Translations under genes and position numbers: made by a program
In this document: positions 28,001 to 63,397 of the stretch, in pieces
How the letters are laid out: every line of letters begins with the position of its first letter
Numbering within the stretch: the stretch's first letter is position 1
Assembly: GCA_965644265.1 (NCBI GenBank)
Contig: OZ286460.1
Location: forward strand, 64,914,001-64,978,000
DNA length: 64,000 nucleotides
Direction of reading: 5' to 3'
Source: Glycera tridactyla
Taxonomy: Eukaryota
The notes under the pieces: model-generated
The model's input: only the letters and a program-made list of their open reading frames with translations
What the model was told of the DNA's origin: nothing
The model's database searches: none

Positions 28001-31000
28001 CATGGAATTCTTGGTGCCCTTTCACGTTATCTTCCTCCTATTATTGCTATTAGCAAATACATGTCTGCTGTCAATACCAATTAATCCGTATGCCTTTATG
28101 ATTCAAGCATTGGTTGACTGATTAATCTTATGAGAAAGCCTATGGCATTGAGACATTTTTTTCTGATCTCGCCCTTGTCGTCAGCAACCCTCTTGTCATT
28201 GTCATTGTTGGCTTGTTTCTGCTGAAGTTGTCGACTGACCCTTTCCCCACCTTCGCTACAGCTATTATTGCTCTTGCCCCCCCCCCAATTCAACAATACC
28301 CATCGGAATATATCAGATAGAACCTCATCTATTACTCTCAGTACGCTTTCCTCCCCCCCCCCTCTCTCTCTCTCTCTCTCCATCTCTCTCATTCTCAAAC
28401 ATGCACACACAGACACACTCACACACACAAATATCATATCAGGCAGTGGATTGAACTCCGAGAGAGAGTGAGTGAGGATTTGACTGGTTTGTCTCTGTGT
28501 ATTTGTGATACCGTTTTTCCAAAAGTTCTCGATATATGGCGGAAGATTGTATCTAGTCTATATAGACTCTGGATAATACATCAAATTTGAGACCAAATTT
28601 TGATCAACTAAGTGACAATATACGGAGGACAGGTTCTACACGTTTTTGACAACGCTGATAACTGATATCGATCGATATGTGACACAGAGTGCCTATGCGT
28701 GTCTTTAGGTCGAAGGCACTTAACCTGCTCACACATGTCTTTTGGGATGATGATGCTCAAGGACATGTGATCCAAAGATAGAAACATCTGTGGAAAGTCT
28801 GCCGACCAGAAGAACACAGATTCTCTTACTCATGCTTGATCGGTTTGTTGTCTGTCAACCATCTCAGCATTGTTATTCTTTCTATCTGCTGCATGTATGT
28901 GGGTCACGATCTTCAATGCACATTTCTGGATCTTGTCACTCCTGGAATCTCTCCTGAGAGCCATGCCTGCCAGTATGGTTCTATTCCCAATGAATGATTT
29001 TTCCTCTACATAAAGTTACAAAAGAAACAGATTTCGTGATCCAGGAATGTTTGTAAATGGCCATACAAAATATTTACGTTAATCATTCTCATAATTGATC
29101 TCGAATGGCAGCTGTACAGCAATTTCATTCTACAAGAGGTCATATTGTGTATAATTACACAGAGATCGAGATCGCATGTACGGACACACCCATTTATTCA
29201 ATGCTCATGATGCGATGTTTATATATTGTACCCAATGAAAGATTGTCATTTCTAATGATCGGCATGAAGTCTAGCGCGTAGCATTTTCGAATCAGAATTT
29301 GGGTCAGGTCCGGTCACTGAATCTGGAAAATGTCGAAGAAAATGAAAGATGTTTATATCCAACATATGATGAAAGGATGGGGCTTTATGCGTCTCAAGGA
29401 GGCGGTCAAATGAAGATTACGTACGTATATCGGAATCCCAAAAGCTTGAGAATGTAAGTTCATCAGAAGATTTTATGCAGCTCATGTACACTCAGTTTAG
29501 ATGAAGTGAATAATACTGCTTTGTTCTCTTTCAGGTCGACGAGCAGCCGAGCCGTGAAGATAGAGTTGGAATGTATCTGTATTTTGTATTTTTCATCGTC
29601 TTCGGGTCATTTTTCACCCTCAACCTCTTCATTGGTGTAATCATCGACAACTTTAACATGCAAAAGAAAAAGATAAGTATTTAAGCTATTTCATCATGAA
29701 TTATATAGGATTATCTACGATACTTTGCATGTCTATTCACAAAGTACACGTATTTGTACTCTCTGAAGTATGTGTCATTCCATATATGAGTGAATTCACC
29801 TGGCCAATCTTTCCTTTGATGTTATGTTTCACGATAATGTGAAAGTGTGATTTCCGGGGTAATTCCAAAATCCTGTAATAAACACTACCATAAACAGAAT
29901 ATTGGAAGCATCAAAAACAACCTGTTCCGATGCTTCGCTTTGGTAACTCTGCAGGCACCATATAGAAGACCTAGGAGTAGATAAGTGAAAGTACAACCCT
30001 ATGATATTTCTGTAGTAATCAACGAGCAATGTTGCTGTTTATCAACACTGTATGTCTCCCCTTTCAAACATACGGTCGAGGTTTAAAAACGGACATACCA
30101 ATTTCAATGAGAAAATACAACTTATATTCAGCAGGCAAGTTATTGCTGTTCGTATCATTCTTGGAAGGGGATGGTCTCATGGCAGTATTCAAAGTAGCAG
30201 AATTGTATCAACTAATGGGAAGCTGTCCGTAATTGTTGGAAGGAGAAAATAACAGAATATAAAGACATATTGCAACACCCTCACGTTTCCCTGCTGTCAA
30301 CAAACTTGTGCTTGATTGCAAAATCAAAGGTTTGGCATCTCATTTCACATTGATGACGCGTGTAGTCATGTTTGTTCTATAATTGCTGAGTGTATCACAG
30401 CATCGTTCCCTTTTAGGTCATCACATACTATTCATGTTCCTCATCAGGTTTTTCACAAGGAATGTCATATATGCTTGGCACACATGCGTCTACAATAATC
30501 ACCACAGTATTTGTTGACCTGATCCATTGAAGCAATAACCATTTAGTACTAAATGCTGCTTAATTCAAGGTAGTCGACTAAGTTTCCAATACTGACTGGA
30601 TCGAGCTTTTAAAAGGCCACAGTCAAACCATAGAGGCATGCCTCTTTCATGATGTATCCCAAACTCATGATAGAACGGAGCAATTTGATCTTCAGCGAAA
30701 CTCAAGAGTGAAGGCAAGGCGGTAGTCACAACCGCGACAATAATTCAATAAGTGAGCAGTTGTATAAAAGAAGCCATCGAGTGTGCATTGGTCTGCTGGC
30801 TAAACACCAACAAACAAACTGGTGCCATTTGAATTCTACTATGAATCCCGACAGTTATGTAATCGAACCAATCTGGCAATATGCAGGTATGAGGTGCCTC
30901 CTCCACAAATGTAAACTGTGATGCAATAGCTGATTATCAGCTATAGCCAAATGTCTCTTGCAAGATACTCGTAATTATATAAAAGGTATCCATCTTTATT

Positions 31001-31970
31001 CTTGGTCTGTATAAATGAATCTGACATGTGCCTCATGCCAAATCAAAGCAGCAGCCTGTCAAGCATATCATAGGCTTCCTGCGCAGCAATGAATTCCGTA
31101 TACCTTTAGATTTCATCATACTTCTAGAGATTATAGCACAAAAACATGAGCCAAGATCTGCTGAAATTCTATCATCATATCGGTGATCTTCAATATATAG
31201 AATACCCATGCAAGCTATTTCTTTCTGGGAGATATCATATCCCAGATCCACTGTCTTTATATGGACATCACCTGGTAGGAAGACGAGATTTGAGAAGAGT
31301 GATCTTGTATGCGCTTGCTGAGAATGTGCATTTTGTATATCCTGGTCACTGAGGTCACCGTGTAGTTTATAAGTTTCCCTTCTTAAACACATCTACAATA
31401 CTGTATATCCCAGCGTAAGTACAAGTAATATGTTGGTAAACTAATAAAGTACCAAAACACGTGGAAAGTCATCAATGGAAGTCAACAAAGTCGTCAAAGT
31501 TGGTGAGTAGTCAATACTTATAATTGCACTGAGTAGCTTACAGCCACATTTTAGAAAAATGAATTGACCTGCATACTAGTTAAACAGTGTCAATCTCAAG
31601 CAGTGTTCCTCCTCTTAAGTTATTGCACACGACAAATCAACGGATAAAGGCTTGCATTCCGCCACTAATTCTGTGTACATGTTAAGACAATGCAAAGACC
31701 TTCAGCGGCACAGCCTGCCTCGGTGGCTCAGTGGTAGCGTGCTGGGCTGGCATGCAATTAGTCCAGGGTTCAATCCCAGGGCCTACCATGCAGGAATGTT
31801 TCACCCTTCATCTTCGCTCCTCCATGGCAGGTGGTCTGATTTAGCCTACTCAAGTGCAGAAGGTGGACCTAAAACAACACCATTTCCATTTCTTCAGCGG
31901 CACACAATGTCGGTGCAGCTTATAACTCAGTACCGGACAATACAGTGTGGATAACTATTCACCTATGAAC

Positions 31971-32021
<51 letters not shown>

Positions 32022-35000
32022 GCTCTATTGGCCTATATGGTTCAATCTACCCCTACATGTTCCATAATCATTGGGTCTTCGTGCGGGGGGGGGGGGGGGT
32101 GATATACCCGACTTGCCTGATATCCATCAGTTAAAATTGATTTTCTGAGATTATTCATCGTATTCATGTTACCATATGTTGAACTAATTGTCCGAACCAC
32201 ACTAACTAGACATGAAGATATCAAATCACTTATATACAATTAGTTAGATCTTTAACCATTTAACCATGTATGTGGTGGAAATTGAAAGTACAACCTACAC
32301 AAAGGAATGTAGCTGTGTGAGAGCCATCTTAGGAGTTCACGACCGTTCCTCTCGAATATGTCCGTACCATTCTTATTGGCATTATTCGTATGTGACATAC
32401 ATCACTCACTCCTTTATGGTTTAGTCAGGGGCTTATGAAAAAAAAACCACAATCAAGGAAAAAGTGGTAATTTGAAAGTTTGAAATCTACCCGTCACTTC
32501 CGGATATTGATTGGCTACGGTAGGCTGCGGTAGGCTACGATCAGATTATCATGAAAGAAATGTGTCTATTGCCAATCAAGCAATAGAGCTTAGTTATACA
32601 AATATTGTCTCCAGGACGATACAGATTGGCTAGTTCCAGTCTTCATGTTGAGAAATGACTGTAATGTGAAGTGACGAATTCAGTTTCAACAGTTGATGAA
32701 TGTATCGATTGTGATCAGGAAGCACAGATATAATTACATGATGCATACCCTCTTCGTTGTATACATATTAGGCTGCATTCTTGTCTGCAAGTGCTCCCAA
32801 TCTCAGTCTGCAGCTATGGGAAGTCGTGGCAGAATTTGTTTTGCTGTTTTACTTGAAAGCTATAAAGTGAAATCATTCCACACCAGATGACTACTGAAAG
32901 TCTACAGCGTTTTGTAGCTGTCTATATATTATCAAATGTTTAATGTTTTTCAGGTAGGGATAGGTACCACATGGATATGAGTAGAATTCTAGTGCAATCG
33001 ATTTGGATAATCATGATGTGGTTATATTTCTCTCATCTATTTTCATATTTTCAAAGATCAGAGTTATTTACAGAAATACTGCTTCCCTTGGTTCCAACAG
33101 ATTTTTCTATTGCATTTATTGTTGACAGAATTGTTTCATGCGAATACGTTATTCAAATCATTCCTTCTTTTGAAAAATGATGTATTGTAGGTTATGACAG
33201 TTGATGCTCCTTTCCACAGCAATTCTTTTTCATCTACATACCAGATTTTCAGAAACATAAAATACTACTATGATTACTATCATCATTACTTTCTTTTCAC
33301 ACTAACTCGCATATCTTGATGAATGCCTTCAGATCTATCTGGCCGCTACACCAATTATACGAAATCCGAGTAACAAAAGCAGTGCGAATATTTTATGAGA
33401 ATATGGGTGCCTATGCTGATGTCATTACGTGTACATGTATCAGAGGGATTTGGTGTCACATCCCACGGTAGCATTTCTACCTTTCGAAATTCAATTTTAC
33501 GATTCATCATCGTAATGTTATGTTGTTGAAGCTTATAGTCAGCCCAACCAACTTCGACCTAATCGTACGTGCACGCTACAGCGTATATGACACTTTGCAG
33601 AATAAGATATGCTGATGCAGATAAAAGTGCAAAATCAGATTCGATCATTGTTCATTGCAAAGCACAGACATTCTGATCCCACAATGTAAATCGCATATGA
33701 CAACTACCGATGTTATCCGTGTGATGCTCTCTGTGTAAGGATAATATGCTATCCAATGCCTTGAACAGAATTTCCGCTGAATGAGGAGTCAAAGATGAGT
33801 TTTGGTTGCCAGAATTCAGCCTGACCTGAGCTCTTTGGCTACAACATTGTCATCAGTGATGACACATTTGAAAAAGTGACTGAATGCTCAATCTGCAGTC
33901 AATAGATCCGTGACACCTCCTTTCATCTTGTACATGTATTTTGTGTTTGCTTGCGGATTATAAGGTATGGAGGATAATTTCATCTTAGCCTTTTTTTTAT
34001 TCATTTCCATCCTTTTCTACCTAGCGTAGTATCTTGAAAATTTTCGACTTATTTATTACATATTCTTGGGACAGCAAAGCCTTTTATTGCCTGATTATTA
34101 CCTACATGCCAGAATAACTGCCCCTGTTCAGCAATTCACATTTCACTGTCTAGCTTCTTTCCATTGTTCGTCGTGAATTATGACACCAGAATGTGGTCGC
34201 CATCACACCAGCACGAAGGCTGCAGTGGTCCCCTTATTGTCTCACATTTTGTCACCTATTTTCCTACCGGTAATTCACATTGAGAGAATGAGAGCAGACT
34301 CGCAATTGGGTGCACTTTCAGAGGGCAGGACTCCATACACTTGTTGAAACGTCTTTTCAGCTGACCACGAGGGAGGAAGCCACTGCAACCAGGACTGAAA
34401 GCGAAGGCCTATTGCTCTATTATCAATATGCCTGCATTTACCTGTTTATCGCATTTGATAGCACACATTTTGATTTTTATTGTGGTTTCCAATATTTGGT
34501 ATAGTGGATGGATATGAGAATCCGTGTTCATCACATTTACACTGTGATGAATGCACCATGCTTTGGGTTCGTATCATCGATACTTCAGGTCCCCCTCAAT
34601 CAATCGTATCATCACTATATACTGTATGGCGGCAGTGGGTTATTGAAATCACTAAAGCTTCATATATTGGACTCAATATTCTTTAGTCCGAGGAAGGGAA
34701 TTGGGCTTGAAATCATTACCAATTCTGATCTACTTGAATCTGGTATGCTTGCTGCTCTTTGATGCGCAAGAATACCAGTTGAATTACCACTTGAAATAAT
34801 TCTTCGAATTTCCGAATGAAAATCAATATAGAACGCCACAACATCGATGCGATATAGACTCGGTCCAATCTTTCTATCTGTAAATTATGATTTCCCCACT
34901 GTTACGGTCCTGTGTCGTAGTGGTTGGGATAGGCACAGACTATCATCATTGAAAGATATGTAAGATTTAAGGATTTTGAAAGGGATCGTTCGCTAATGAT

Positions 35001-37482
35001 ATTCTTCCCCGTCTATGTAACTCGCTCAAAAATAATTTCAGCCAAAGGAATATCTTAATGCTATCCACAAGCTTCGTAATGGTTTGCTGCTGCGTGGTTT
35101 TGCTACTTGCAGCTTTACCTGTTCTGTCCATGGATTTCAATGGACTCTCCTACTGATGGAAAATTTGAAAAAAAAGATGGTGCGATTGAAAGTGTCTTAT
35201 ATATGAACTTTTTGCAAATCATTTGGTGCATCATTACATGCGAATGAGATAAACTCATTTATTATATGGCCTTATCATCTGATCCACAGACAGATCTATT
35301 TTCAACTATATATTTTGTAGAATGAACAATCAAGAGCATGCTACTGTAGGTTGTCAAAATGAACGTCCCATGCTACCATGTAAGGATGAGATTAGATTGA
35401 TTCCAGAGACAGACATATTGCTTGAGATGATTATTCCCTTTTTGGTAACAAATATAAGCTGGTGTTGTCTCATTGGTCTGTATGGCATGGAGGTATGCCT
35501 CCGAATGCAATCCTTGGCATTCGATCTTATACTGGTATTGTACATGTGAAATCCAGGCAGTGGCTAACGGACAGCCCACAGGCATTGATGTTTTCAGTGT
35601 TTTTAACGGGTATTCCAAGTTTGGAAGGTGACGGAAATGGGAGATTAACATGAAGACTTCACAACTGAGGCTAGAATATACACAATATATGGAGTAACAT
35701 CACATGTGAGATTCTGTCTCTTTGAGGTCAGGAGATCTTTTTTATGATACCTCTGATGTCTCACAATATGCCTCCCCCGACATTTCAGTCATATTTGATA
35801 TTTCTCATCCTATGCGAATTGTAGTGATATTAACTCTCTAGCAGAAAATGACTCGGCTTGACATACTATCAATGAATCCATCGAAGCCACAATCATGCAA
35901 TCAGGGGTGGGGGCCGGGACAGCTCACTGATGTCAGTTCGAATGAGACCTGGTACTTTAGAGTTCCTATGCGAATCACCGGTACTTCCTGGAGTTCAATC
36001 ATTTGCTTTACCTTCTTCTGGGGCCCGCCAGTCGAAATGGAATGGTCGAACATTGGATCCAGGCTTTGTAGCAGATATCAGCTCCTTGGAGCCAAGTATC
36101 CCTTGTTTGATATTGAGCATAGAGATAGCTGTAGTCGTGACAGATTTCAACCACGGGGACATATCTATTTGTTAGCAAATACCAATCACCTCTTCGGTTG
36201 TTCGCATGTGGAAGTGAATCCCATTCGGTCCTTCATGACCGGTACCTCGGGCAGGTAGATTCCTGATTCTGAAATTGTCCCTGGGAATTGCCAGTTTGTC
36301 ATGATTTGGTAGCCTGGGCAGCGTCATCTGTAGGTGGTATTGGTTGATTCTTCTTGGATAGATGCTCACTAATCCGGATTGTTCACATGTTTATGTCATT
36401 GTGATCGACGTTTACATATTGTCATTTTTGGTAATTGACAAGGGGCGAGTGAATCACGGAATATTCGAATTCAGGTATCATGCTCTCTAATGATTTCCAT
36501 ATGACCATACGAGTCAAATTTCCCAATGCAATTTAACCTTCCACGCATATAATCCGATTAGATTGATGGTGGAATAGATTCAGTCTGACTGATCCAGAAA
36601 TTGGGATGGGTTAAGGGGGGGGGGGCTTTAATGAACCCATACGTCGACTGTGCTCTTTCCTTCTGCCTGTGTTTTACCACCTCACCTTTGTTGACGATAT
36701 TTGATTACTTCCTGCCTTTTTGGAATATTTTGACCATTCCTGGATCGCCCCGACTGATTGTGGACATACCTGTGAAAGATGTGCATGTATATCAAATAGA
36801 GGTCCCGACACGAATTCTATATAGATGAGTAGTCCAAATATCAAAACATGGGTTACATGGGAAGAATGGCTCAGAATTATGCCAATCTGCAGGTGATATT
36901 CGGACATATAGGTACATTGCACGTCTTTCGGTATTTCACTACCCCTTTACTCGACAATTCTTCTGAATTTGGATATGGTTAAGGACTTTGAGATTGGTAT
37001 TGACTTTTTTCATCGATTTTGAGGTTGCATTGGTATTTGTGTATTTCTCTGCTGTTGAATGGTTTCCTGCACCCTTTCCCTCTTGATTGGCTGAATGCCA
37101 ACTCATAACTGGTGGTTTTGTGCTTACCTGATAATTTTGAAGTGCAGTATAATACTGTTGGTTTTAGATGTGTGTGCATTTATTGATTCCAAATGATTTG
37201 GAGGTGGACACTCAATACCAGTTACTTCCATCTCATACTTATGCTCGCTTCTGACATTCTTGACCAGAGCCAAAGTTTTGTCTATTCATTGGGAATTTTC
37301 GGTGAAATGTTATTTTATTTGAAAACGGAGGATTTATCTCATTCAGCCCTGCTGATACGATGCTCGCATCACAAGCAGTTCACATTTCAACTTATGTATG
37401 TAAATGCATGCATGAATATATGCATGTGTCATTCAAGTATATTGTCCTTATACTATTTCGATATCATATGCGCAGATTCGGA

Positions 37483-37540
<58 letters not shown>

Positions 37541-40500
37541 GGGAGACAACCATGCTGACGATGACCTGCAATTGTATTCAAATATAAATATGCATTCAGT
37601 TTATTGAGCTATTTTCATTGATATTGATAAGAATGATTTAGTACAGTGTACGTTTTAGAGGGACATGGCATTATCACATTCCCTTTCACATGTTACTCTT
37701 TATTGCTTTTCCACTGTTCACCCTCTGATGTCAGTCATATAGCTTTGGCATGTTCAGAAAATTTGGAGCACTAGCAATGTTTCATTGCCACAATGTTAAT
37801 TTGGCATACTGCACTGACAAGTTTAAAAAGTGATCCGTGGAACTTTTTCGTGGTGTTTAATGTGGTTAGATGGATTAGTGAAATATATGCATCTTCATAC
37901 ATCACCTACCTATTTGGCATGGTATTTTGACATGGTGTTTGGCGCTCTGTCCCAGAGGGCATTATCTTTTCTGTGCTGGCTGATATTCAGCACTGTCATG
38001 ATGCACTCATGTATGTGATTGTTACACCAGTTTTATAGTTACGTCATGGCCGGTTCGTGGTTTACGTCACGACAATACGTGCATGTAAACAGACTTAATC
38101 TAGTTTCTCGGCATTTTTGTTACCCCACTACACATATTTTCTACGTACACGTGATTACGGTTATGTTTTTTTTCAAGATTCGTTTTTCTCTTTCTTCATT
38201 TTTGACAGAAGCAGCTGTATTTACTTCACATCCGATCACAGACACATGGTGATCCATGCCGAGTGTTCAGTAGAGAAACCATCTCGAAGTACATGATTGC
38301 ACATGCTTGAAAACTGTTTCATGGTAGTAAATGATTTAAGTATATGGACCCGGACATATTTGAATTAGACGCTAAATTGATACAGTGAATTGGGTTTAGT
38401 CCGATATGACCCATTTGGTGTTGAAAGGACGTTAAACCAAAATCAATCAATCAATCAATCAATCTGTACCATTACCTGAGTGTTCATCACATTGGAACTA
38501 TGATTCATCGAATACAAATTATCTCATACAAAATTGAAGTGTTCATCTGCACTTTAAGAACACAAGATCATTGATGAAGGATCAACTTCACCAGGAGATG
38601 TTTCTTCTCTTCAAATAGACCGATGGTCCATGGTCCATCTCAGTTGCAATGACTGCGCTGTAACCATAACAATTACATTCAATCATGATCATAGAATTCC
38701 CGTGTACAGAGTATCGAAACTGTTATGGTCCTCGAGGTGTACTTGGCAATAATGTCTACTGAACTGGAAGCAATATTGATCTACATGTGAATCTGGGGGA
38801 TATCCTTTCAGGCCATTGGCTGACACTCTTGTTTAGGGCAAGAAATCCCCATGACACTATATGAAGAAAATGGCAGGACCTTTCAACTCTGGAAATCTTG
38901 TCCATATGGAGAAAGGGGGTGATTTTCTTTATATTGAAATACATGGAGGATATTCTTGCATTTATACTCTTTCCTACGATTTCACATCCGATTTTGTAAA
39001 TTTTTACCAAATTACAGCTGAAAGTTGCTGTCATTCGTTTTCCAATAGAAATGCATTTCCGGCTGTGTCATTTGCAATTTGTTCCTCATACGGCGTGGAC
39101 AATTCATTCATTACACAGCAGAAAATGCATTTCGACTTGCGTACTTGGTTATATTTGCAATCATGTGACAATGATTTTGAGAGCTTCGATTTCAGTAGGA
39201 TTCATAATCAGCGTCTCGTGAACATTGTATGCCATTTTATTGGTATTATAACTGGTATAAACTAGTCATCTATATATCACCCTTGATAAAATACAAGTGT
39301 GGCATAAAATCGTTAGTCGGACTGGGAATAGCCAGGCCAAATACGCTCATCTCAGAGCCTATATGACTGTCCTGTCAAACAATCATATTCCAGATTCTGT
39401 CCGCATTTGTTGACATTCATACATTCTCTGCTGGTGGCTTACTTCTCATTCTTATTCAACATCTAACGACCATTCTGAAATCTCATATTTTATCACCAGC
39501 CATCTTGCGATGGGTCAGCAGCTCTCTAATGACCCCCTCCCTGTGATTAGATGCATTTCACAATTGAATGTGCAACAATTTCACAAGATGGCTAGGCTAG
39601 CAAAAGCTCTACCTCCCCTCGCTTTATCAATTATTGTTCTTTGTGTGGATTTTTTAGACGTGTACTGCACATCTCAAGTTTTTCTTTTAATTCGAACCAA
39701 GCATTTTCGAGAACGCCAGGTCATTGGTATCAAAAAATGCTCATCGAGATATTAGAGCTGGCTGATTCACTAGGTCTCACTCTTTGTAACTAATAGATTC
39801 TGAAGGTGCGATGCTCAGATATTCCTAATCTGAAAGAAGATGAATAATGGAATGTCAGTTTATGTTGAGTGAGGATGAATGAATTGGTACCTTAATTCGC
39901 GAGAGGCGATACGTATAGAGCCTGGCATTTCTAGCCCGAACAAAGACACAAGAGTTTGATGTGGCCTATTGATCTTACGGGGTTTACAGATTTAATCTGC
40001 ATGACCAGATTAGGATAGTCAGATTCCGAGGATTCTGTGTCTTTTTGCAATATTAAACGACTATGGATACCAGTACCAGGTCTAGCAGAATAGCCCTCTC
40101 AAAAAGTCTGGTCTCAACATCCCATAGGCATTTCTATAGTTTCATCCCAGCAAGAGCATCTGTTGAGCGAGACTCAAAACTTGCTTGAGAGGCTAGGCAA
40201 TTGTTCGGAAAAAAATATTATCTGGTAATACCTATGTAGTGATGGGAGGCTTACTCTCTTTCTTATCATTCACAGAATCCTGGGATGTCTGGTTAGAAGC
40301 CAATTTCTACGGCATTGCATAGTCCCAGTCGTAGCTACCTACTAAGATATTTGACAGGCCTGACTAGACCAAGCCTACTGGACTATTCAACTGCTATTCT
40401 ATTTTGTTTATTATGATCATTTATGGGCTGTACCTTCCTGTCCATGACTCAGATTTATGAGTGATGTTTTCATCGGTGAAATTCTATGTACATGATGTAA

Positions 40501-43500
40501 CTAGGAGAAATGATTGTGCAAGAGATTATGTCGTACATGATGCAAGTAATGCTGAATTTATGTTGATATGACGCAGTAAATCTCAGTATGCAGCATATTC
40601 ATATGGATGAGGTTTTATCTAGCTTCTTTTTTATCGCACATCTTCAAAATACTCTTCACAGATACATTCACACACATGTACAAAACATATATCTCATCAT
40701 ATCATCTCACCTTACTCTAAATCACCTCATCTTGCCTNNNNNNNNNNNNNNNNNNNNNNNNNNNNNNNNNNNNNNNNNNNNNNNNNNNNNNNNNNNNNNN
40801 NNNNNNNNNNNNNNNNNNNNNNNNNNNNNNNNNNNNNNNNNNNNNNNNNNNNNNNNNNNNNNNNNNNNNNNNNNNNNNNNNNNNNNNNNNTGCAGCAATG
40901 CCCATTTATATGGCTTCGTTTAAATTTTTTATGTAGAGGAATGCATAGATAAACACGTGGGCGGATAATCGGACTTGGATGTATTCTGTATATGTAAAAT
41001 AATCGAGATCAGTGTCAAAGTCTTCCCAACTTGTCTGCCTGTTTTCTGTGTCTGACAACTGACGACGGTTAAAATCCAATAGCAGACATAATTCTGATTC
41101 TGAATTGATTTGCCCCCCCCCCCCCAAATTGATAAATTTCCAGGCTAAGTGGTGCTCAGTAAAGCATGTCATAGGACTTCGACATTCGTGGTGGCTGTGT
41201 CCACGATATCTGCCTGATTCCTGTATCTATCCCACATCCAGCATATGACACATTCAGGTGGTTTTTCGAGATAGATATTAATGGTGTGGTTTAAGTATTG
41301 CGAGTGCGACTACCAGCTTTTTTAAGCTCACAAGTCATCAGTTACCTGTCATCTGTATGTGCAGGACCAATCACTTCTTTAATTTTCTTGATTTGACTGA
41401 CGGCTGGTGGCTGGGCGGTTATAGTAGATATTGAAATGTGTTTTCTCATTGACATTCTGTGAATGTGGTATGTTCTAGAAGCGTCTGGAAATGTTTCTGT
41501 CCATATGAATGGATGATGCATTGTGAGAGATACATGCAGAGAACCATTCCTCATGGATGCTGGTGGTGGACTACCAATGATCATGAATGACCTTTCATTG
41601 ACATGTATTTCTCTGTTGAGCTACCAATGATAGATCACATTGTGCCTGGTCTATATTTGTTTACGGTCATCTGCGATGTACTTGAAGCTTACCATGAGCT
41701 GTAAGAGCTGTTCTTTGCATGGAGACGTGACGATCATGCTGTATTGACGAATATACTCATGTCCAGCGCCCTATGCTCCTTGTGCAAAACATAAAGCAGA
41801 AAAAAATCTTGCATATATTGGCTTGAGGATACGTGTTCCTTTGCTAATAATCTGAGCTCACGTCAGGTCCTCGTCCCGTAATATATTCATATTCGTGGTT
41901 AGTAACATAATGCAGGACACTGATTTAGACCTGGTCAGGTATGACAAAACGAGAATTGGCATGAACTAAATGAGTCAAACACTACATTATGCGTTGCTGT
42001 TGTGTGCATCCTGTGCTCGTGATGTGACAAGTGACCAATCATGGTAAATGAGTCAAGCATATATATATATGTATCGAGACTTGCAACTAGAATTGCAGCA
42101 TACTGCGATCAATGATTCGTAGGATTGGAATGCTCGCCAGCATGACCAATATCACTTCCTGCTGCACTAGTGTGAAATTTATTAGCATACCTTAACTGCG
42201 GTGGTCATGTTCATGACCAGATAGGATCATGCATATGTTCCCCTTATGGGCGTGTTTTGATACATGACATCATTGTGATAATGAGTGAGAATGCATACAA
42301 ACACAAATATACTCATTGAGATTTCTTATAATGCATTATTGTAGAGTTGCTTGCTCAACGGCCATATAATAAATATAGAAAGGTCACGAATCTGATGATC
42401 ATCACTAAAGAATCCCCAAAATGTGTGCTACTATCATTCAATTCCAGGGATACAGTTCATAAGGTGATATTCTGTTACACAAGTATGTCATTGAAGCAGC
42501 AGAGCACTTCATTGCACTCCAAATTGTAATTGATTTTATATACTTCCTTAAACATTCTTCCTTTTTGTCTCGACCAGACGAGTGGACTCATTCCCTGAAA
42601 TTTGCCAAGGACAATAATTATGTTGTTCTGATTTACTTAGTGTTAGGGATGTGAATCTTCAGGAACCCAGTCAATTTTCACAGGTACCTGAGGATTAAAG
42701 TTTGGTATCGTGTTTCTACATGACGATGGCAGAATCCAAGAAGTTTATCATATGCTCCCGGAGCACTTTTCTGCTATCTCTACCCATTTTCTTAATGTTT
42801 GGGAATTCCGTATTCCTCCAGTATTTCCAATTACAGCAGTAGTCAAATAAACAAAACGACATACACGGAAAATGTTTGATATTGGTTGCTGACAATCTCG
42901 CCAATCTGACTGAAGGTGATTTCAATTTACATCCCTGACTTGTCTTCATGTCAGAACAATGTGTACTACTTGCCCTCTACCTATGCAAGTGTGCTGCTGT
43001 TTCTTGTGACGAATGTACCGACAGATAAAGTTTGCATTCTATTATGTACTCAGATGGCCGTTGGTTCGAACTGTCGACATGTCATACGAAATGTATGCTT
43101 CTCACCATTGGTTTGACCAGATACTGCCAGTGTTACATTCACCGCCGATTCCACTACTGTGTCCACCTTCTCACTTCCGGTGCAAGCTATTCAGTGTTTT
43201 CACACGCATATTTATTGCATTGCTCTCAAACGTGAAGGCATATATTGTCAGAGAACACGAGAGTGATGTGCAGTGATGTGCAGTGATGTGCAGCCATGTA
43301 ATCTCTAGGCATGCACAGATAGAAACTCCAGGCATGCACAAACATGTTTGTCATCTTTGATGCACATATTTTGTGTGATATCACGTGTTGCCTATTCCGT
43401 GTTTTGCTATAAACGTAAGACAACGGTGCCCGAAGCTAGGCTGCAATGACACCCAAATAATATTGGTGTGGTAAGGGCTGAGTTTCGAAGATCCAAATCT

Positions 43501-46500
43501 CCGAAGAAGTGAATGCTGCACCGGAAAATGAGGATGTGGATAGAGACTAAACACAATTCACTTTGCTGATATCATAGATGTAGTCTACTAGCTAGTCAGT
43601 TATTATTTCAAACTAATCAATTTCACGACATCAATGGTGCCGAAGTTGAAATCTTTTCCTCCCGAAATGCACACAGTCCCTGCTAAAAAGCTGATGAAAA
43701 TATATAAGCAGATAAACATCGATATAACCATCAGAATATGCCAAATCTGCACTCGAAACAATCTTCCGTTAAGTAATTGCCCTGAGACCTGTCAAACTCG
43801 ACTGTACCCTATCATCATGCTGTGATATGAACACAATGGAAAACACCACGACTAATACCTAGCCAACTCTTGGTCAATGAGTCAACTCTGATGCACCCCC
43901 AATTTGCAAACATTAACTAACTTTTTTTCTCCGAAGAACAGACGTACACAGTTCATAAATTAATAACAAGAGAATTGCGACTGTTGCGATATAGCATCAA
44001 TGACAATATAAATTGCCGTATTTTGTTCATTCTCACCATGTGTTGTCAGGAATCTGGGCCTACCATGCGACTTGGTGATAGTTAATGATATCACAAACAA
44101 AAGCTATATAACTTCTGTTTGTACATTCATTGATAAAATACATTATTGGAAAATGGTATGCACTGATAGTTTTGCTCTACCCACGAGATTAATCTCAAGT
44201 TATGTCCTTGATACACCTTATCATTGGCATGATACAGAAGATTGTGTATATCCTGCTTTGTAAATATTACAACTAAAATCCAATTCATTTTTGGCAATGG
44301 TTCAGCGTTCACCTTCATATTGGCCTGATTCTGGGGCCGGTGACCGCCCCTTCCCTTCCCCCTGACAACAAACTTGCAAGAAACAAGGTTGCTCTGAGAA
44401 ATGTTGATTCCCTGGCCAAAGAAGGCATCAGATCAGGTCGTTTCTTGGTAATTTTCATTGTGCCTTTTAATATCTTGGGATGTGATATTCGGTATTGAAA
44501 TGGTCATGGTTCCGTTTGACGGGAATCTAATTGTATGGGATTTTCGTGATGATGTTCATGAGTAGAGGCTCTCCCATCATAGGTCTTCAATCAACTTCAC
44601 ATTTGAATAAGTGGCCAGGTTTTTGTGGTCACTTAGCACGTCATTTACGAATTTGAAGTAGTCCATCAAAATTGAATCATATAGCTGGGCAAAAGATATT
44701 TTGTATATTCATATCCAGAATTCTTTCTGATCTTATCCACTACGAAGGATCGTTTGATGCATTTTGGCATTGATTGTACAACTTTGGCATGGTTGAGTCT
44801 TATGACACCAACTCAATGCTAGCCGATGATGAGCATGAAGCTGTGATAGATCTCCTACAACGGTAAGTGCGTAGAGACAGATCCATGGTCGGAGGAAGAA
44901 CTGCTCCCAGGGGACGACACCCTGCTTATGCTTCAAGGAGGACGCCATATAACGTTATAATCTCGTATTTCAATTTCTTCCGCGCCATCTTGACAGGTGT
45001 TACATTGTTCTCTGTTTATTTGTTTACGCAGGAGGTTCGTTAGAGATGTTCATGACGGAAGATCAAAAGAAATACTACAATGCCATGAAAAAGCTCGGCT
45101 CAAAGCAACCGCAAAAACCCATTCCAAAACCAAGGGTATGTATCCGTTGCTGCATGTATCATGGGTATGGGGTATATTTGAACGTCCATGTTTTCGTATG
45201 AGTGAGGATGCGTATGTGTATCTTCAGTCAGGGAATATATTAGTCGATATAACTACATTTTGATAACTTTATGAATTGTATCAAACTTATCAGGTCGATT
45301 CCGAGCTTTGCAAAGCTAAATTTATTCAAGGGTATATCGTAAATGTTCAATTTTATTGTCCACATATTTTCGATCTCCGATTTGCGGGGTAGGAAAAATA
45401 CACCTTCTCTGATATATCAACCGTGTTATACTCAACACGGATACGATCCTTGTGTAGATATCTTAGCAAAGAAAGACCCTTTAATATCATTGACATTTTC
45501 CGTCATTTTCACAGTACTGTCTTTATCCCTGTCTTCAATCAAGAATTAAGCAGTGACATTTTTTATGTTTGTTTCAGCTCAAATGCCAGCTGTTCTTCTT
45601 CATGCTGACCACAAATCAAAAGTTTGACATTGGCATCATGAGCGTGATCATGCTGAACATGATAACCATGGCGATGGAACACTATGGTCAGAGCGCAGAC
45701 TTTGCGGACGTTTTAGGTTATATAAATCAGGTGTTCATCGCCATCTTCACGCTCGAGTGCATCATGAAGATCATCGGTCTACGCTGGTACTACTTCAAGC
45801 AGCCGTGGAATGTCTTTGACTTTGTCGTTGTCGTTGCGTCCATATTAGGTACGTCTGTGTCTGGCAACATCAGCGACCTGATACGGACCTGTTTTACGAA
45901 GCAGTCTTCGAACCGTAGGGATGGTTGGGTGACGGCTATACCTGGACCACGTTGTTTTTCTCTCCTTCGAACATGCCCCGCCTCATTTCCAGGGCATGCC
46001 GCATCACTAACAGTTGGATACGCTCCTGATTGGATTAGACTGTATAGGTTGGCATGGTTTTCCTATCAAAATCATGCCAACTGGAGGCATCTAATTCGAT
46101 TGTGAGTGCATCCAAGATTTGAGTGCAAGGCATCCCAGACTATTCATCATTTATTCTGGTGTTGGAAATTGATAATTCCATAAATGCCAATCGAGATGGA
46201 CTAGACCCGCAAGAACGCATTGTCTAGTTCAATCTCTTTTGCATATACTGGTAAATTTGTCTGGACATACTTTCCGATTTCCTTTTTTCTTTCCGGCTAT
46301 TAGTGATCCTCTTTTAATGTGAGCTTATTTCATCATTTCTGCACATGCTTTTCCTCCGATAAAGTTCTTTTGAGACAGGGACCAATGGGAAAGCCTTATT
46401 TATCTTCTTTTTCTTCCTGTTGGATTTCTCTTAAACAAATCGGTAGGCCAACATTTTAACAAGGTCACAATCTATAGAAGTTAAGATCAATTTCGAGCTT

Positions 46501-61500: not shown

Positions 61501-63397
61501 TGTTTTCAATGCACTGGTAGTTCCGGATTCCTAGCCGTTTCGAATTGGTCCTCACCCTGCTAATGACAGGGAGTTGCAAGTAGGTTGGTTGTTATTTCTG
61601 TTAGAATCACGGCGATCGTCTGGATGGGGACATGATACAACGCCTCAAAAAGAAGGCAAACAAGTTGGTCTAACTTCCCATTGCACATCTGGTACTCTCT
61701 CGTGATAGCACGGATTTAACCACAGCCATAACTAGAACACCCGTGTCTATTGCGTATTGGGCCAGAAAAATGGTGTGGGTCCACTGCAACCGCTGCTGGT
61801 ATCTACCCGCTATCAAAGGAGCCTCTCTGTGCAACAGCACCTCTTAAACGGATATGCTCCTTATGCGTGGTTTAGGCTTGTGTGCATGCAGTGTTTCTTT
61901 TATAGGTCCTAGCAGCTGGCCCTCCCGGATGTTAATCCTGTGGATTCGTGCTGATCCAACCCAGTCGGTTGGGCCCGTGATAACCCACGGAGTTGATGTC
62001 CCAGTGAGAGCTTGAAGCTATGCTGGTAGGTACATAACGGCAGGATCGAAAGACTGACCGTTTGCTATTCTTCTTCTCTTGCAGGTCTCGCTTTTGCAGA
62101 TCTTATCAACAAATATTTTGTGTCTCCGACACTGCTGAGAGTGGTCCGTGTATTCCGAGTCGGGCGCGTGCTTCGACTGGTGAAATCTGCCAAGGGCATA
62201 CGTACACTTCTCTTCTCTCTCGCTGTCTCCATGCCAGCCTTGTTTAATATTGGACTACTCCTCTTCCTCGTTATGTTCATATATAGTATATTTGGGATGT
62301 CTTTCTTCATGCATGTGAAACACACAGGCGGTTTGGACGACATGTTCAATTTTGAGACATTTGGCCGTAGTATGATATTATTGTTTCAAATCTCGACTTC
62401 GGCAGGATGGGATTCGGTGCTTGCTGGGCTCATGAATGATCAGGAACCTGAATGTAATGCCACCAGCACAGATAACCAGCCTAACGGCAATTGTGGAAGC
62501 AGTCCACTTGGAGTGCTTTATCTCGTCACTTATCTCGTCATTAGCTTTTTGGTCGTCATCAACATGTATATCGCCGTTATTCTTGAGAACTTCAGTCAAG
62601 CCACGGAGGACGTCCAACAAGGACTAACACAGGACGACTTTGATATGTACTACGAGATCTGGGAGAGGTTCGACGAAGAAGCAACGGAGTATATCCCGTT
62701 ATCGAAATTGCCGGAGTTCGTCGATCAGCTGGAGGAGCCACTTCGATTGCCGTATCCTAACCACTTCAAGCTAGTACAACTTGATATTACTATCTGTGAA
62801 GGTGAAAAAGTACATTGTGTCGATATTTTGGACCAACTCACCAAAAACTTTTTAGGGACTCTTGATGAGGCTGGTGAAATAGGAGAGCTTAAACAGGGTC
62901 CTGAGAAACATGATTATCACCCAATTAGCAGCACCCTACGCCGACAGCGAGAAGTTTTATGTGCTAAAGTAGTACAAAAAGCTTGGCGACGGTTTGTCGA
63001 GATGAAACGGGCTGCAGCCCAAGAAGGTGGTCAAAATCCAAACAATGAAGTTAAGCCGTCGGAGGAATTTCATCCCCAACATACAATTGTGAACATTGAA
63101 GAGGTGGACGAGGAAGCGGAGGACGACAATACGTTAGACAAAATCGGGGAGGTCGAGGAGAAACAGGAGGAGGAGGAAGAGGGGGGAAACAAGGAGGAGA
63201 ATGATGCCAAGAGAGAGAAAGAGAACAAACAAAAGGCAGAGGATACTCAAAAAGATAGAGATGGACAAGATAAGCCTGGTGGTGGGAAGGGTGGAGACGA
63301 TTCTTCGCCACCAGGTGGAGGTGGTGGGGATGATTCCTCACCACCAGGGGACTCTAAAACTGTTGAATTGTATCCAGAGAGCGGTGTGGTTGCATAG
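9813..63397 (+). CDS. Nav1: Voltage-gated sodium channel alpha subunit (Nav1/para/SCN type), spliced 3' half (DII-III linker, DIII, DIII-IV linker, DIV, C-terminus); 5' exons lie upstream of the window
   Basis: Ten to eleven exons join in one frame. Family motifs: [10 protein letters not shown] (DIII S1), [22 protein letters not shown] (DIII S4), ATFKGW (DIII filter K), [23 protein letters not shown] (inactivation linker), [17 protein letters not shown] (DIV S4), TSAGWD (DIV filter A), [17 protein letters not shown] (DIV S6). K in DIII and A in DIV fit a DEKA (Nav1) filter; the DI/DII filter residues are outside the window. Confidence 0.98.
10944..11240 (+). CDS. Nav1: Nav exon, Ser-rich DII-III linker ([10 protein letters not shown]...EINEVNVVF)
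   Basis: Acceptor ctctacctccacacag, donor ttt|gtacgt; 297 nt open, phase 0/0; joins in frame to VKYPDECC of the next exon. Confidence 0.8.
12490..12675 (+). CDS. Nav1: Nav exon, end of DII-III linker and DIII S1 (VKYPDECC...[16 protein letters not shown])
   Basis: Acceptor ttcttctcctaccag, donor ctt|gtaagt; 186 nt, phase 0/0; conserved PxxCC...WW...[11 protein letters not shown] motif. Confidence 0.97.
12924..14170. repeat. Degenerate trinucleotide-like low-complexity tract (AAC/ACC/ATC, TAG, TAA/TGA runs) around two N-gaps
   Basis: Visible runs such as gtagtagtagtactggtagtagt and taataatgatgaatataatgatgatg. Confidence 0.75.
14294..14362. repeat. Compound microsatellite (CA)n(TA)n
   Basis: Direct inspection. 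Confidence 0.98.
15007..15068. repeat. (AT)n microsatellite
   Basis: Direct inspection. Confidence 0.98.
15454..15630 (+). CDS. Nav1: Nav exon copy A, DIII S1-S2 loop/S2/S3 start ([19 protein letters not shown]...[12 protein letters not shown])
   Basis: Acceptor gttttatttatacag, donor aca|gtaagt; 177 nt, phase 0/0, no stops. Confidence 0.95.
15675..15851 (+). CDS. Nav1: Nav exon copy B, tandem paralogue of copy A ([19 protein letters not shown]...[12 protein letters not shown])
   Basis: Acceptor gttccattcatacag, donor aca|gtaagt; 177 nt, phase 0/0, no stops; 160/177 nt identical to copy A by hand alignment. Confidence 0.93.
16104..16165. repeat. Tandem repeat, 3 x 20 nt (gaactatcagccttcgaaat)
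   Basis: Units start at 16104, 16124 and 16144. Confidence 0.92.
17201..17256. repeat. (TG)n microsatellite
   Basis: Direct inspection. Confidence 0.98.
17623..17745 (+). CDS. Nav1: Nav exon, DIII S3-S4 ([41 protein letters not shown])
   Basis: Not in the ORF track. Acceptor gcccctttacag, donor aag|gtaaga; 123 nt; RxxRxxR voltage-sensor ladder. Confidence 0.97.
18428..18485. repeat. (TG)n microsatellite with one interruption
   Basis: Direct inspection. Confidence 0.97.
19238..19510 (+). CDS. Nav1: Nav exon, DIII S4-S5 linker, S5 and extracellular loop ([21 protein letters not shown]...[15 protein letters not shown])
   Basis: Acceptor ggtttctttttacag, donor gtg|gtacgt; 273 nt; two conserved loop Cys and two N-x-T sequons (NAT, NYT). 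Confidence 0.98.
22930..22983 (+). CDS. Nav1: Nav exon, DIII pore loop ([18 protein letters not shown])
   Basis: Acceptor ctcttgtttacag, donor gac|gtaagt; 54 nt; filter Lys codon at 22939-22941. Confidence 0.97.
23023..23214. mobile_element. MITE-like element with about 35-nt imperfect terminal inverted repeats
   Basis: Left arm gcctaagtatagaatcccggacctcaggttttttt (23023-23057) matches the reverse complement of 23180-23214 (gcctaacagtacattcctggacctcacgttttttt). No clear TSD. Confidence 0.6.
24849..25700. repeat. Degenerate (TCTA/TCCA)n satellite with an internal duplication of about 100 nt, interrupted by an N-gap
   Basis: ctagcaatccatctatatatctatagagacattgaacgttactcaatct occurs twice (near 24900 and 25002). 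Confidence 0.9.
29535..29672 (+). CDS. Nav1: Nav exon, DIII S6 ([17 protein letters not shown]...[20 protein letters not shown])
   Basis: Acceptor ttgttctctttcag; 138 nt; ends at aag|ataagt, a non-canonical AT donor. Confidence 0.97.
31713..31891 (+). mobile_element. tRNA-derived SINE (head loosely tRNA-Ala-like), 179 nt, with 13-bp target-site duplication
   Basis: A-box tggctcagtgg, B-box ggttcaatccc, tRNA-like part ending in cca, tail catttccattt; flanked by cttcagcggcaca at 31700-31712 and 31892-31904. Confidence 0.85.
31974..32018. repeat. (AT)n microsatellite
   Basis: Direct inspection. Confidence 0.98.
37485..37539. repeat. (CA)n microsatellite
   Basis: Direct inspection. Confidence 0.98.
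45028..45135 (+). CDS. Nav1: Nav exon, DIII-IV inactivation linker ([36 protein letters not shown])
   Basis: 108 nt, donor agg|gtatgt; MFM motif at 45046-45054; KKLGS kinase-site motif retained. Confidence 0.96.
45578..45848 (+). CDS. Nav1: Nav exon, DIV S1-S3 (LKCQLFFF...[15 protein letters not shown])
   Basis: Acceptor tttttatgtttgtttcag, donor tag|gtacgt; 271 nt ending in phase 1. Confidence 0.98.
57393..57728. repeat. Tandem minisatellite, 8 x 42 nt (aaaggaggcatcgctcctaataggatgtattcaaaaatacgt)
   Basis: Units start every 42 nt from 57393; this explains the three overlapping repetitive ORFs in the track. Confidence 0.98.
62085..63397 (+). CDS. Nav1: Nav terminal coding exon: DIV S3-S6, EF-hand-like domain, IQ-like motif, acidic low-complexity tail
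   Basis: Acceptor ttcttcttctcttgcag; phase-1 entry gives [22 protein letters not shown]. The ORF-track start at 62120 is an internal GTG (Val). Stop TAG at 63395-63397. Confidence 0.99.

What the first reader, a model, noticed from the sequence alone, without database searches (positions are those of the whole stretch)
29673..45027. 15.4-kb AT-AC intron with a U2-like donor at the position of the vertebrate SCN AT-AC intron
Seen: the DIII S6 exon ends aag|ATAAGT and the next exon is preceded by tttatttgtttAC|gca, giving KKK|[10 protein letters not shown]. The donor fits the U1 consensus except at +1 and is not the U12 ATATCCT motif. Established: vertebrate SCN genes have an AT-AC intron at this junction (SCN4A intron 21) that is spliced by the major spliceosome. 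Inference: this rare intron subclass predates vertebrates and has persisted in an invertebrate Nav1 despite expansion to 15 kb.
Basis: partly seen in the sequence, partly recalled or inferred. Interest (0 to 1): 0.78.

Follow-up and report, generated by a model that had tools for sequence, protein, structure and literature searches.

The report
Ancient AT-AC intron in worm sodium channel
A worm's nerve sodium-channel gene has a 15-kb intron with the rare AT...AC ends at the same spot as in vertebrate channel genes. Public cDNA contigs confirm it is spliced there, and other invertebrate genomes show that this odd intron is older than vertebrates.

Summary

- **Splicing.** The DIII-S6 exon (29535-29672) ends AAG and the intron starts ATAAGTAT. 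The linker exon starts at 45028, just after TTTAC. Spliced public contigs from two studies carry the last 30 bases of the S6 exon directly in front of the linker exon. So the donor cut is 29672|29673, no hidden exon exists, and the nested GT-AG form (KKK-IR-GSL) was not seen.
- **Type.** The signals are major-spliceosome (U2-type) signals, not U12 signals. This rests on sequence only.
- **Age.** The same intron, in the same phase after the same 138-nt exon, is AT-AC in a skate SCN4A-like gene, a spider, a stick insect, an isopod and a second, unnamed relative that is the closest match to this worm. It is AT-AA in the annelid Paralvinella, GT-AG in two molluscs, and lost in an ant.
- **Unexpected.** Two of the three junction contigs start 3 nt further in, at 45031. 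They lack the Ala codon GCA, which would make the intron end in CA. This could be an alternative 3' site or an indel allele, and I could not tell which.
- **Gap.** The N gap at 40738-40890 lies inside the intron and affects only its estimated length.

This is a new member of a known kind, and the interest is moderate.

The parts
29535..29672 (+). DIII-S6 exon, 138 nt, phase 0 at both ends. It encodes VDEQP...[13 protein letters not shown].
   Evidence: E 1e-17 to human Nav1.x DIII S6. The 138-nt length with a preceding AG is conserved in the skate, three arthropods, an annelid and a gastropod.
29673..29680 (+). 5' splice site ATAAGTAT. It starts with AT, has G at +5 and T at +6, and can pair with U1 at -2, -1 and +2 to +8.
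   Evidence: The cut 29672|29673 is shown by the loose-end letters of three cDNA contigs.
29673..45027 (+). AT-AC intron, 15,355 nt as assembled. No coding or known RNA feature was found inside it.
   Evidence: no Pfam hit in the 10 longest ORFs; only short microsatellites; no Rfam hit. cDNA skips it entirely.
40738..40890 (.). Assembly gap (153 N) inside the intron.
   Evidence: It is not filled or looked up, and it affects only the length estimate.
44988..45025 (+). Presumed U2-type 3' region. Branch-site candidates are TCTTGAC (A at 44993) and GTTAC (A at 45002), followed by a T-rich tract at 45005-45025.
   Evidence: Sequence only. Pyrimidine content from -25 to -3 is 0.78. The best U12 branch-box match is 6/8 and ends 33 nt from the 3' end, which is too far for a U12-type intron.
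45026..45027 (+). AC, the 3' terminal dinucleotide of the long (+Ala) form.
   Evidence: Run X8 records 12 and 13 start at 45028 with the S6-exon letters directly before.
45028..45031 (+). GCAG, made of the Ala codon GCA plus G. The second observed junction is 45030|45031, which drops GCA. The nested CAG| acceptor ends at 45031.
   Evidence: X2 record 7 and X7 record 9 start at 45031 with ...AAAAAG directly before. The X1 unitig begins at 45031. GCA is invariant in 6 of 6 AT-type protostome loci.
45028..45135 (+). DIII-DIV linker exon, 108 nt. It encodes [36 protein letters not shown], the inactivation-gate motif region.
   Evidence: (E 1e-14 to the Nav1.5 III-IV linker).
45136..45577 (+). Next intron, canonical GT-AG. 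It serves as the internal control.
   Evidence: The joint is seen in all four runs.
45578..45848 (+). DIV S1-S3 exon, 271 nt.
   Evidence: The loose end behind it reads the start of the last exon at 62085.

Best explanation
This is the orthologue, in an annelid-like Nav1 gene, of the vertebrate SCN 'AT-AC type II' intron (SCN4A intron 21, SCN5A intron 25). It is a phase-0 intron right after the KKK that closes DIII-S6, with AT...AC ends but major-spliceosome signals.

Proposed mechanism, with the status of each step:
- **Donor recognition (inferred from sequence).** U1 binds AAG|AUAAGUAU through an unusually long match at -2, -1 and +2 to +8, which offsets the mismatch at +1.
- **3' region (inferred).** An ordinary branch site and T-rich tract recruit U2.
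- **Second step (established for U2-type AT-AC introns, not tested here).** The first-base A is accommodated by a last-base C in place of the usual G-G contact.
- **Product (shown by cDNA).** The mRNA reads [13 protein letters not shown].
- **Age (shown by comparison of loci).** The intron dates at least to the common ancestor of protostomes and vertebrates. It was kept in arthropods and some annelids, changed to GT-AG at the same position in molluscs, and lost in an ant.
- **Second mRNA form (seen, cause not resolved).** A form lacking the Ala codon (junction 29672|45031) also exists. I lean towards use of a second 3' site 3 nt downstream.
For: - Three spliced contigs from two studies place S6-exon letters 29643-29672 directly before 45028 (X8) or 45031 (X2, X7). 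The control GT-AG joint 45135|45578 appears in all four runs.
- Both exons match the Nav1 DIII-S6 and III-IV linker.
- The 5' site matches the U2 positions +2 to +6 at 5 of 5, and the U12 9-mer at only 5 of 9. There is no U12 branch box within range, and the pyrimidine tract scores 0.78.
- AAG|AT[A/G]AGTAT ... AC| occurs at the same codon boundary after the same 138-nt exon in a skate, Argiope, Timema, Armadillidium and locus L011.
- **Intronless ant.** It encodes KKK-AGG contiguously.
- Among exon-level genomic ORFs that read through the donor, 89 start with I or M (AT) and 24 with V (GT).
- **Literature.** PMC1557818, PMC4712308 and PMC2831892 cover the vertebrate U2-type AT-AC introns and the G at +5.
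Against: - U2 versus U12 dependence was not tested experimentally.
- The runs are only guessed to be RNA, although their splice joints show cDNA.
- Depth is low (2-11x) and only contigs were available, not raw reads.
- Only one contig shows the exact AC| junction, while two show the 3-nt-shorter one.
- Paralvinella has AA rather than AC before GCAGG, so the 3' end is less fixed than a strict A-C pairing model predicts.
- The papers that might already report invertebrate conservation (Wu and Krainer 1997 and 1999, Widmark 2011) could not be read.
Confidence: 0.85

Rival explanations
1. The 3-nt-shorter mRNA (KKK-GGSLEMF) is not an alternative splice product. It comes from a genomic allele or a second near-identical gene copy that lacks GCA, so that copy still splices AT-AC as TTTAC|GGAGG.
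For: -: runs X2 and X7 show only the short form and X8 only the long form, as expected for genotype differences.
- The contigs with the short form (and X1) each carry one other letter within 45577-45850 (X1 record 2: 45690-45850). X8's contigs, which cover only 45577-45827, show none.
- An intron ending in CA has no precedent known to me for the major spliceosome.
Against: - An indel falling exactly at the exon's first codon is a priori unlikely.
- The X1 unitig starts exactly at 45031, which suggests both forms in one sample.
- A chelicerate-like cDNA (L005) also lacks the Ala codon, while the spider genome has AC|GCAGGGGG.
- GCA is invariant in all six AT-type protostome loci but is GCT or GCC where the intron is GT-AG or lost. 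That points to a splicing role for that A.
Confidence: 0.38
2. The intron is removed by the minor (U12) spliceosome despite its degenerate signals.
For: - AT-AC ends are typical of U12 introns.
- The variable 3' ends seen here (AC, AA in Paralvinella, possibly CA) recall the loose 3' dinucleotide requirement of U12 introns.
- Nav genes carry a real U12 intron elsewhere (PMC6259924).
Against: -: the donor is ATAAGTAT rather than ATATCCTT. It matches 5 of 9 positions, and three of those are shared with the U2 form.
- The best branch-box match is 6 of 8 and lies 33 nt from the 3' end.
- The orthologous human intron was shown to need the major snRNAs (PMC1557818, citing Wu and Krainer).
Confidence: 0.07
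3. The real splice is the nested canonical GT-AG pair (29676|45032) giving KKK-IR-GSLE, as several automatic gene models predict.
For: - The pair is in frame and is present in every AT-type locus.
- Gene models of Argiope, Trichonephila, Armadillidium (IR) and Timema (MR) use it.
Against: -: none of the three junction contigs has it.
- The intronless ant gene and cDNA-derived proteins from many arthropods and molluscs read KKK-AGG or KKK-TGG.
Confidence: 0.03

Closest known systems
Vertebrate SCN 'AT-AC type II' (U2-dependent AT-AC) intron: SCN4A intron 21, SCN5A intron 25 and their paralogues
   Same: - Same codon boundary, after KKK at the end of DIII-S6, in phase 0.
- Same preceding 138-nt exon and a following exon of about 105-108 nt.
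- Same donor, AAG|ATAAGTAT, which is identical in the skate locus L007.
- AC at the 3' end, G at +5 and no U12 boxes (PMC1557818, PMC4712308, PMC2831892).
   Different: - The host is a protostome (annelid-like) Nav1 gene.
- The intron is about 15 kb, against roughly 0.1-4 kb in the eight other intron-bearing loci I read (0.25-1.7 kb in the five whose donor starts with AT and whose length I measured).
- The downstream exon starts GCAGG, with a nested CAG. The skate locus starts TTTGG.
- A second junction 3 nt downstream is seen.
- snRNA dependence has not been tested here.
U12-type AT-AC intron of the DI-S1 region of Nav and Cav genes
   Same: It has AT-AC termini, sits in the same gene family and is of ancient origin (PMC6259924).
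   Different: It is at a different position. It carries the ATATCCTTT donor and the TTCCTTRAC branch box, and the intron here has neither.
Tandem 3-nt acceptor (NAGNAG-type) alternative splicing
   Same: The two junctions are 3 nt apart and add or remove one residue (Ala) without changing frame.
   Different: The two sites here would be AC| and CA|, not AG| and AG|. It is not shown that both come from one allele.

Membership tests
U2-type (type II) AT-AC intron | Intron begins AT and ends AC, with the junction proven by cDNA. | tested here: met
   X8 records 12 and 13 give 29672|45028. The donor cut is also shown by X2 and X7.
U2-type (type II) AT-AC intron | The 5' site fits the U1/U2-type consensus apart from +1, with G at +5. 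| tested here: met
   ATAAGTAT matches +2 to +6 at 5 of 5 and U1 at 9 of 11 positions. The criterion follows PMC1557818 and PMC2831892.
U2-type (type II) AT-AC intron | Splicing needs U1, U2, U4 and U6, and does not need U11, U12, U4atac or U6atac. | not testable with these tools
   This needs snRNA depletion or blocking in an extract or in cells.
Orthologue of SCN4A intron 21 / SCN5A intron 25 | Same position and phase in the aligned protein, and the same flanking exon structure. | tested here: met
   the skate SCN4A-like locus L007 has AT-AC after NFNQQKKK, following a 138-nt exon.
U12-type AT-AC intron | Donor box [A/G]TATCCTT. | tested here: not met
   5 of 9 matches. Positions +4 to +7 read AGTA rather than TCCT.
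U12-type AT-AC intron | Branch box TCCTTRAC about 10-15 nt from the 3' end. | tested here: not met
   the best match is ATCTTGAC at 6 of 8, ending 33 nt from the 3' end.
Tandem-acceptor alternative splicing | Both junctions arise from one genomic allele. | tested here: inconclusive

The most novel reading that the evidence does not exclude
The AT-AC intron of protostome Nav1 genes has a built-in, conserved double 3' end of the form ...A[C/A]|GCA|GG. The major spliceosome, carrying an A at intron position +1, can finish either at the C (keeping Ala) or one codon later at the A of the nested CAG (dropping Ala).

This would shorten the tether between DIII-S6 and the MFM inactivation particle from six residues to five, which is the vertebrate length. 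It would also explain why the Ala codon is GCA in all six loci I read whose donor starts with AT, but GCT or GCC where the intron is GT-AG or lost. A U2-type intron ending in CA would be a new kind of 3' splice site.
Probability: 0.35. Interest if true: 0.75.

Novelty: new member of a known kind. Interest (0 to 1): 0.52.

Why it matters
- **Rarity.** U2-type AT-AC introns are among the rarest intron classes. A five-species survey found 24 in about 610,000 introns, most of them in vertebrate sodium-channel genes (PMC1557818).
- **Age.** That paper read these introns as a relic of a class being progressively lost. This locus and the loci compared with it show that the sodium-channel example is at least as old as the protostome-vertebrate split, with its donor ATAAGTAT nearly unchanged.
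- **Natural experiments.** The comparison supplies outcomes of such an intron: conversion to GT-AG in molluscs, loss in an ant, and AT-AA in another annelid.
- **Annotation.** Gene predictors that force GT-AG write KKK-IR-G or KKK-MR-G instead of KKK-AGG in the inactivation-gate linker of spider, isopod and stick-insect models. They make similar errors in many bird models.
- **Possible function.** If the 3-nt-shorter form is an alternative splice, it would be an unusual 3' site. It would also be a simple way to tune the inactivation gate.

Tried and rejected
- **Hidden exon or nested gene in the intron.** None was found. No Nav-like ORF, no Pfam hit in the 10 longest ORFs, no Rfam hit, only short microsatellites, and cDNA skips the whole intron.
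- **Possible 45-nt micro-exon at about 45294-45338.** I suspected this from reading the sequence. It is absent from all four runs' contigs, and the next exon simply starts at 45578.
- **Own-species cDNA-derived proteins in the protein collection.** None was found. The best hits are 73-77% (last exon) and 91% (S6 exon) identical. The isoform question therefore could not be settled that way.
- **Cluster members.** I looked for +Ala and -Ala pairs within one species. None was found, but a different variant turned up in copepods.
- **Papers not held.** Wu and Krainer 1997 and 1999 and Widmark 2011 could not be read. I cannot exclude that invertebrate conservation of this intron was already stated there. 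[quoted passage not shown]
- **P0165 (Mytilus).** It was not on record, so the cluster member P0281 was used instead.
- **Donor side.** The donor was read from the loose-end letters instead.
- **Joined model.** Exons were searched one by one by reference.
Full report
**1. What is in the sequence**

The window carries the 3' half of a Nav1-type sodium-channel gene on the + strand.
- **Exons.** Those relevant here are 29535-29672 (DIII-S6), 45028-45135 (III-IV linker), 45578-45848 (DIV S1-S3) and 62085-63394 (DIV S4 to the C-terminus).
- **Protein matches.** The S6 exon matches human Nav1.x DIII-S6 at E 1e-17. The linker exon matches the Nav1.5 III-IV linker at E 1e-14.
- **Source organism.** The closest proteins are unnamed sequences at up to 75-77% identity. 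The nearest named ones are annelid: Paralvinella at 77% and Helobdella at 69%.
- **Junction text.** The S6 exon ends ...CAAAAGAAAAAG and is followed by ATAAGTATTT. The linker exon is preceded by ...TTATTTGTTTAC and begins GCAGGAGGTTCG.

**2. Why sequence alone could not decide**

A canonical GT-AG pair lies 4 nt further in on both sides (ATAA|GT ... GCAG|GA). It is also in frame and has the same length. AT-AC gives KKK-AGG-SLE, and GT-AG gives KKK-IR-G-SLE.

**3. cDNA evidence**

Sampled words from the last exon found runs from four studies. I laid four runs from two studies on 43000-46300. They are Logan contigs labelled only 'RNA?'. All four show the GT-AG joint 45135|45578 and continue from 45848 into the last exon, so they are cDNA.

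Three contigs carry letters that do not lie on the stretch directly in front of the linker exon. In all three these 30 letters read ATCGACAACTTTAACATGCAAAAGAAAAAG, which is window 29643-29672.
- The donor cut is therefore 29672|29673, and the intron starts AT.
- No exon lies between the two exons.
- The IR form is absent.
- In run X8 the exon starts at 45028, which is AT-AC and gives [11 protein letters not shown].
- X8 also holds an unspliced contig (44740-45057) that is identical to the window at the acceptor.
- In X2 and X7 the aligned part starts at 45031, so the mRNA reads ...AAAAAG|GGAGG and lacks GCA (KKK-GGSLEMF).
- The X1 unitig begins exactly at 45031, as expected at a branch between two forms.

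**4. The assembly gap**

The N run at 40738-40890 lies inside the intron. The cDNA joins the flanking exons in the right order and strand. Frame is not at issue, and only the 15,355-nt length is an estimate.

**5. U2-type or U12-type**

The consensus strings come from the legend of Figure 6 of PMC6259924.
- **Donor.** It matches the U2 positions +2 to +6 at 5 of 5. It can pair with U1 at -2, -1 and +2 to +8. It matches the U12 9-mer at only 5 of 9, and three of those are the shared ATA.
- **3' region.** The last 45 nt contain ordinary branch candidates (TCTTGAC, GTTAC) followed by a T-rich tract with a pyrimidine fraction of 0.78. The best U12 branch-box match is 6 of 8 and ends 33 nt from the 3' end.
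- **Literature.** G at +5 is the feature singled out for U2-type AT-AC introns in PMC2831892.

This is sequence-based inference. snRNA dependence cannot be tested here.

**6. Is it the vertebrate intron?**

SCN4A intron 21 and SCN5A intron 25 are named AT-AC type II. They were shown to need the major snRNAs (PMC1557818, PMC4712308). Ten of the 15 human type II introns lie in SCN genes (PMC1557818).

I fetched a skate SCN4A-like locus, L007. It reads AAG|ATAAGTATCC ... CATCTTCAC|TTTGGAGG after NFNQQKKK, and the preceding exon is 138 nt with an AG in front. Position, phase, exon size and even the donor octamer are the same as in the window.

**7. Distribution in invertebrates**

| Locus | Donor | 3' end and exon start |
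|---|---|---|
| Argiope (spider) | AAG\|ATAAGTAT | TTTAC\|GCAGGGGG |
| Timema (stick insect) | AAG\|ATGAGTAT | GCAC\|GCAGGAGG |
| Armadillidium (isopod) | AAG\|ATAAGTAT | GCAC\|GCAGGAGG |
| L011 (closest relative of the window species, 91% in this exon) | AAG\|ATGAGTAT | TATAC\|GCAGGTGG |
| Paralvinella (annelid) | AAG\|ATAAGTAT | TTCCAA\|GCAGGAGG, i.e. AT-AA if Ala is kept |
| Plakobranchus (gastropod) | AAG\|GTAAGT | CATCAG\|GCTGG |
| Mytilus (bivalve) | AAG\|GTATGG | AG\|GCTGG |
| Lasius (ant) | no intron | AAG GCC GGC GGC read through |

A broader, anonymous survey used exon-level ORFs on genomic contigs that read through the donor. After KKK, 89 begin with I or M (AT...) and 24 begin with V (GT...).

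| Exon type | AT donor | GT donor |
|---|---|---|
| NFN-Q (mostly vertebrate-like) | 59 | 4 |
| NFN-E (arthropod-like) | 26 | 4 |
| NFN-M (the type seen in this window and the two other worm loci, Paralvinella and L011) | 4 | 16 |

The simplest history is an AT-AC intron with U2-type signals in the protostome-deuterostome ancestor. It was later converted to GT-AG in molluscs and many NFN-M-type lineages, and it was lost now and then.

**8. The 3-nt-shorter form**

The junction 29672|45031 has no alternative placement, because the neighbouring letters differ. The excised piece would therefore end ...ACGCA. There are two readings.
- **(a) Alternative 3' site.**
  - An indel exactly at the first codon is unlikely.
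  - The X1 unitig begins exactly at 45031, as a branch between the two forms would give.
  - A chelicerate-like cDNA (L005, 79% identical to Argiope para) reads AAG|GGGGGTTCC. It also lacks Ala, while Argiope has AC|GCAGGGGG.
  - The Ala codon is GCA in all six AT-type protostome loci. It is GCT, GCT or GCC where the intron is GT-AG or lost. That is 6 of 6 against 0 of 3, about 1 in 84 by my hand count.
- **(b) Genomic allele or second copy lacking GCA.**
  - X2 and X7 show only the short form, and X8 shows only the long form.
  - Contigs with the short form carry one further difference in the next exon that X8's contigs lack over the part they cover.
  - A CA-ended U2 intron is unprecedented to my knowledge.

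I put (a) at roughly 0.55 and (b) at 0.38.

If (a) holds, the two forms differ by one residue in the tether between S6 and the MFM inactivation motif. That is six residues against five, and five is the vertebrate spacing. An effect on inactivation is speculation.

**9. What is known and what is new**

In the held library I found the U2-type AT-AC intron described only for vertebrates. [quoted passage not shown] I found no statement about invertebrate Nav1.

Wu and Krainer 1997 and 1999 and Widmark 2011 are not held, so prior mention cannot be excluded. I therefore class this as a new member of a known kind.

**10. Verdict**

Interest is moderate. The one open and unusual point is the second junction.

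Noticed in passing
L009:14560-15260 (Mytilus coruscus): There are two tandem copies of the III-IV linker exon about 600 nt apart. Each has its own AG acceptor and begins GCTGGAGG..., and they differ slightly (LEMFMTEDQ and LEMFMTDDQ). They are candidates for mutually exclusive exons for the inactivation gate.
   Followed up: no
Proteins P0247, P0248, P0251, P0252, P0254, P0261 and P0266 compared with P0245, P0253, P0255 and P0257 (copepod-like clusters): Within clusters at 90% identity that include Neocalanus, cDNA-derived proteins read either [11 protein letters not shown] or KKK-GRDV-GGSLEMF. This is a second kind of variation at exactly this junction. It could come from a micro-exon or another splice choice. 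No genome was read.
   Followed up: no
Proteins P0079, P0237, P0240 (KKK-IR-G), P0073 (KKK-MR-G), and bird SCN5A and SCN2A models (KKK-IS-GQD, KKK-IS-QD): Automatic gene models force a GT-AG splice across this AT-AC intron and mis-write two residues of the inactivation-gate linker. P0024, P0093 and P0116 start at the Met of MFMT because the exons could not be joined.
   Followed up: partly
L010:6880-7010 (Rotaria sordida): The intron at this site is annotated 4 nt further in (AAA TTAA|GT...TTAG|GA, giving KRK-LR-ANGS), and the base after KRK is T rather than A. This may be an intron that slid onto the nested GT-AG pair, or it may be a model error.
   Followed up: no
L004:9733-9982 (Paralvinella palmiformis): The 250-nt intron has the conserved ATAAGTAT donor but AA rather than AC before GCAGGAGG. 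The true junction (AT-AA, AT-CA or nested GT-AG) is unknown because no RNA was available.
   Followed up: partly
window:43075-43227, 44136-44639, 44740-45057: Short contigs of the same runs lie on intron sequence. They are unspliced pre-mRNA or traces of genomic DNA, and some carry a few single-base differences and a 3-nt deletion at 44467.
   Followed up: no
window:15370-15950: There are two tandem near-identical DIII S1-S3 exons (ALEDVYL...FVIV). Other readers of this scan have already noted them.
   Followed up: no
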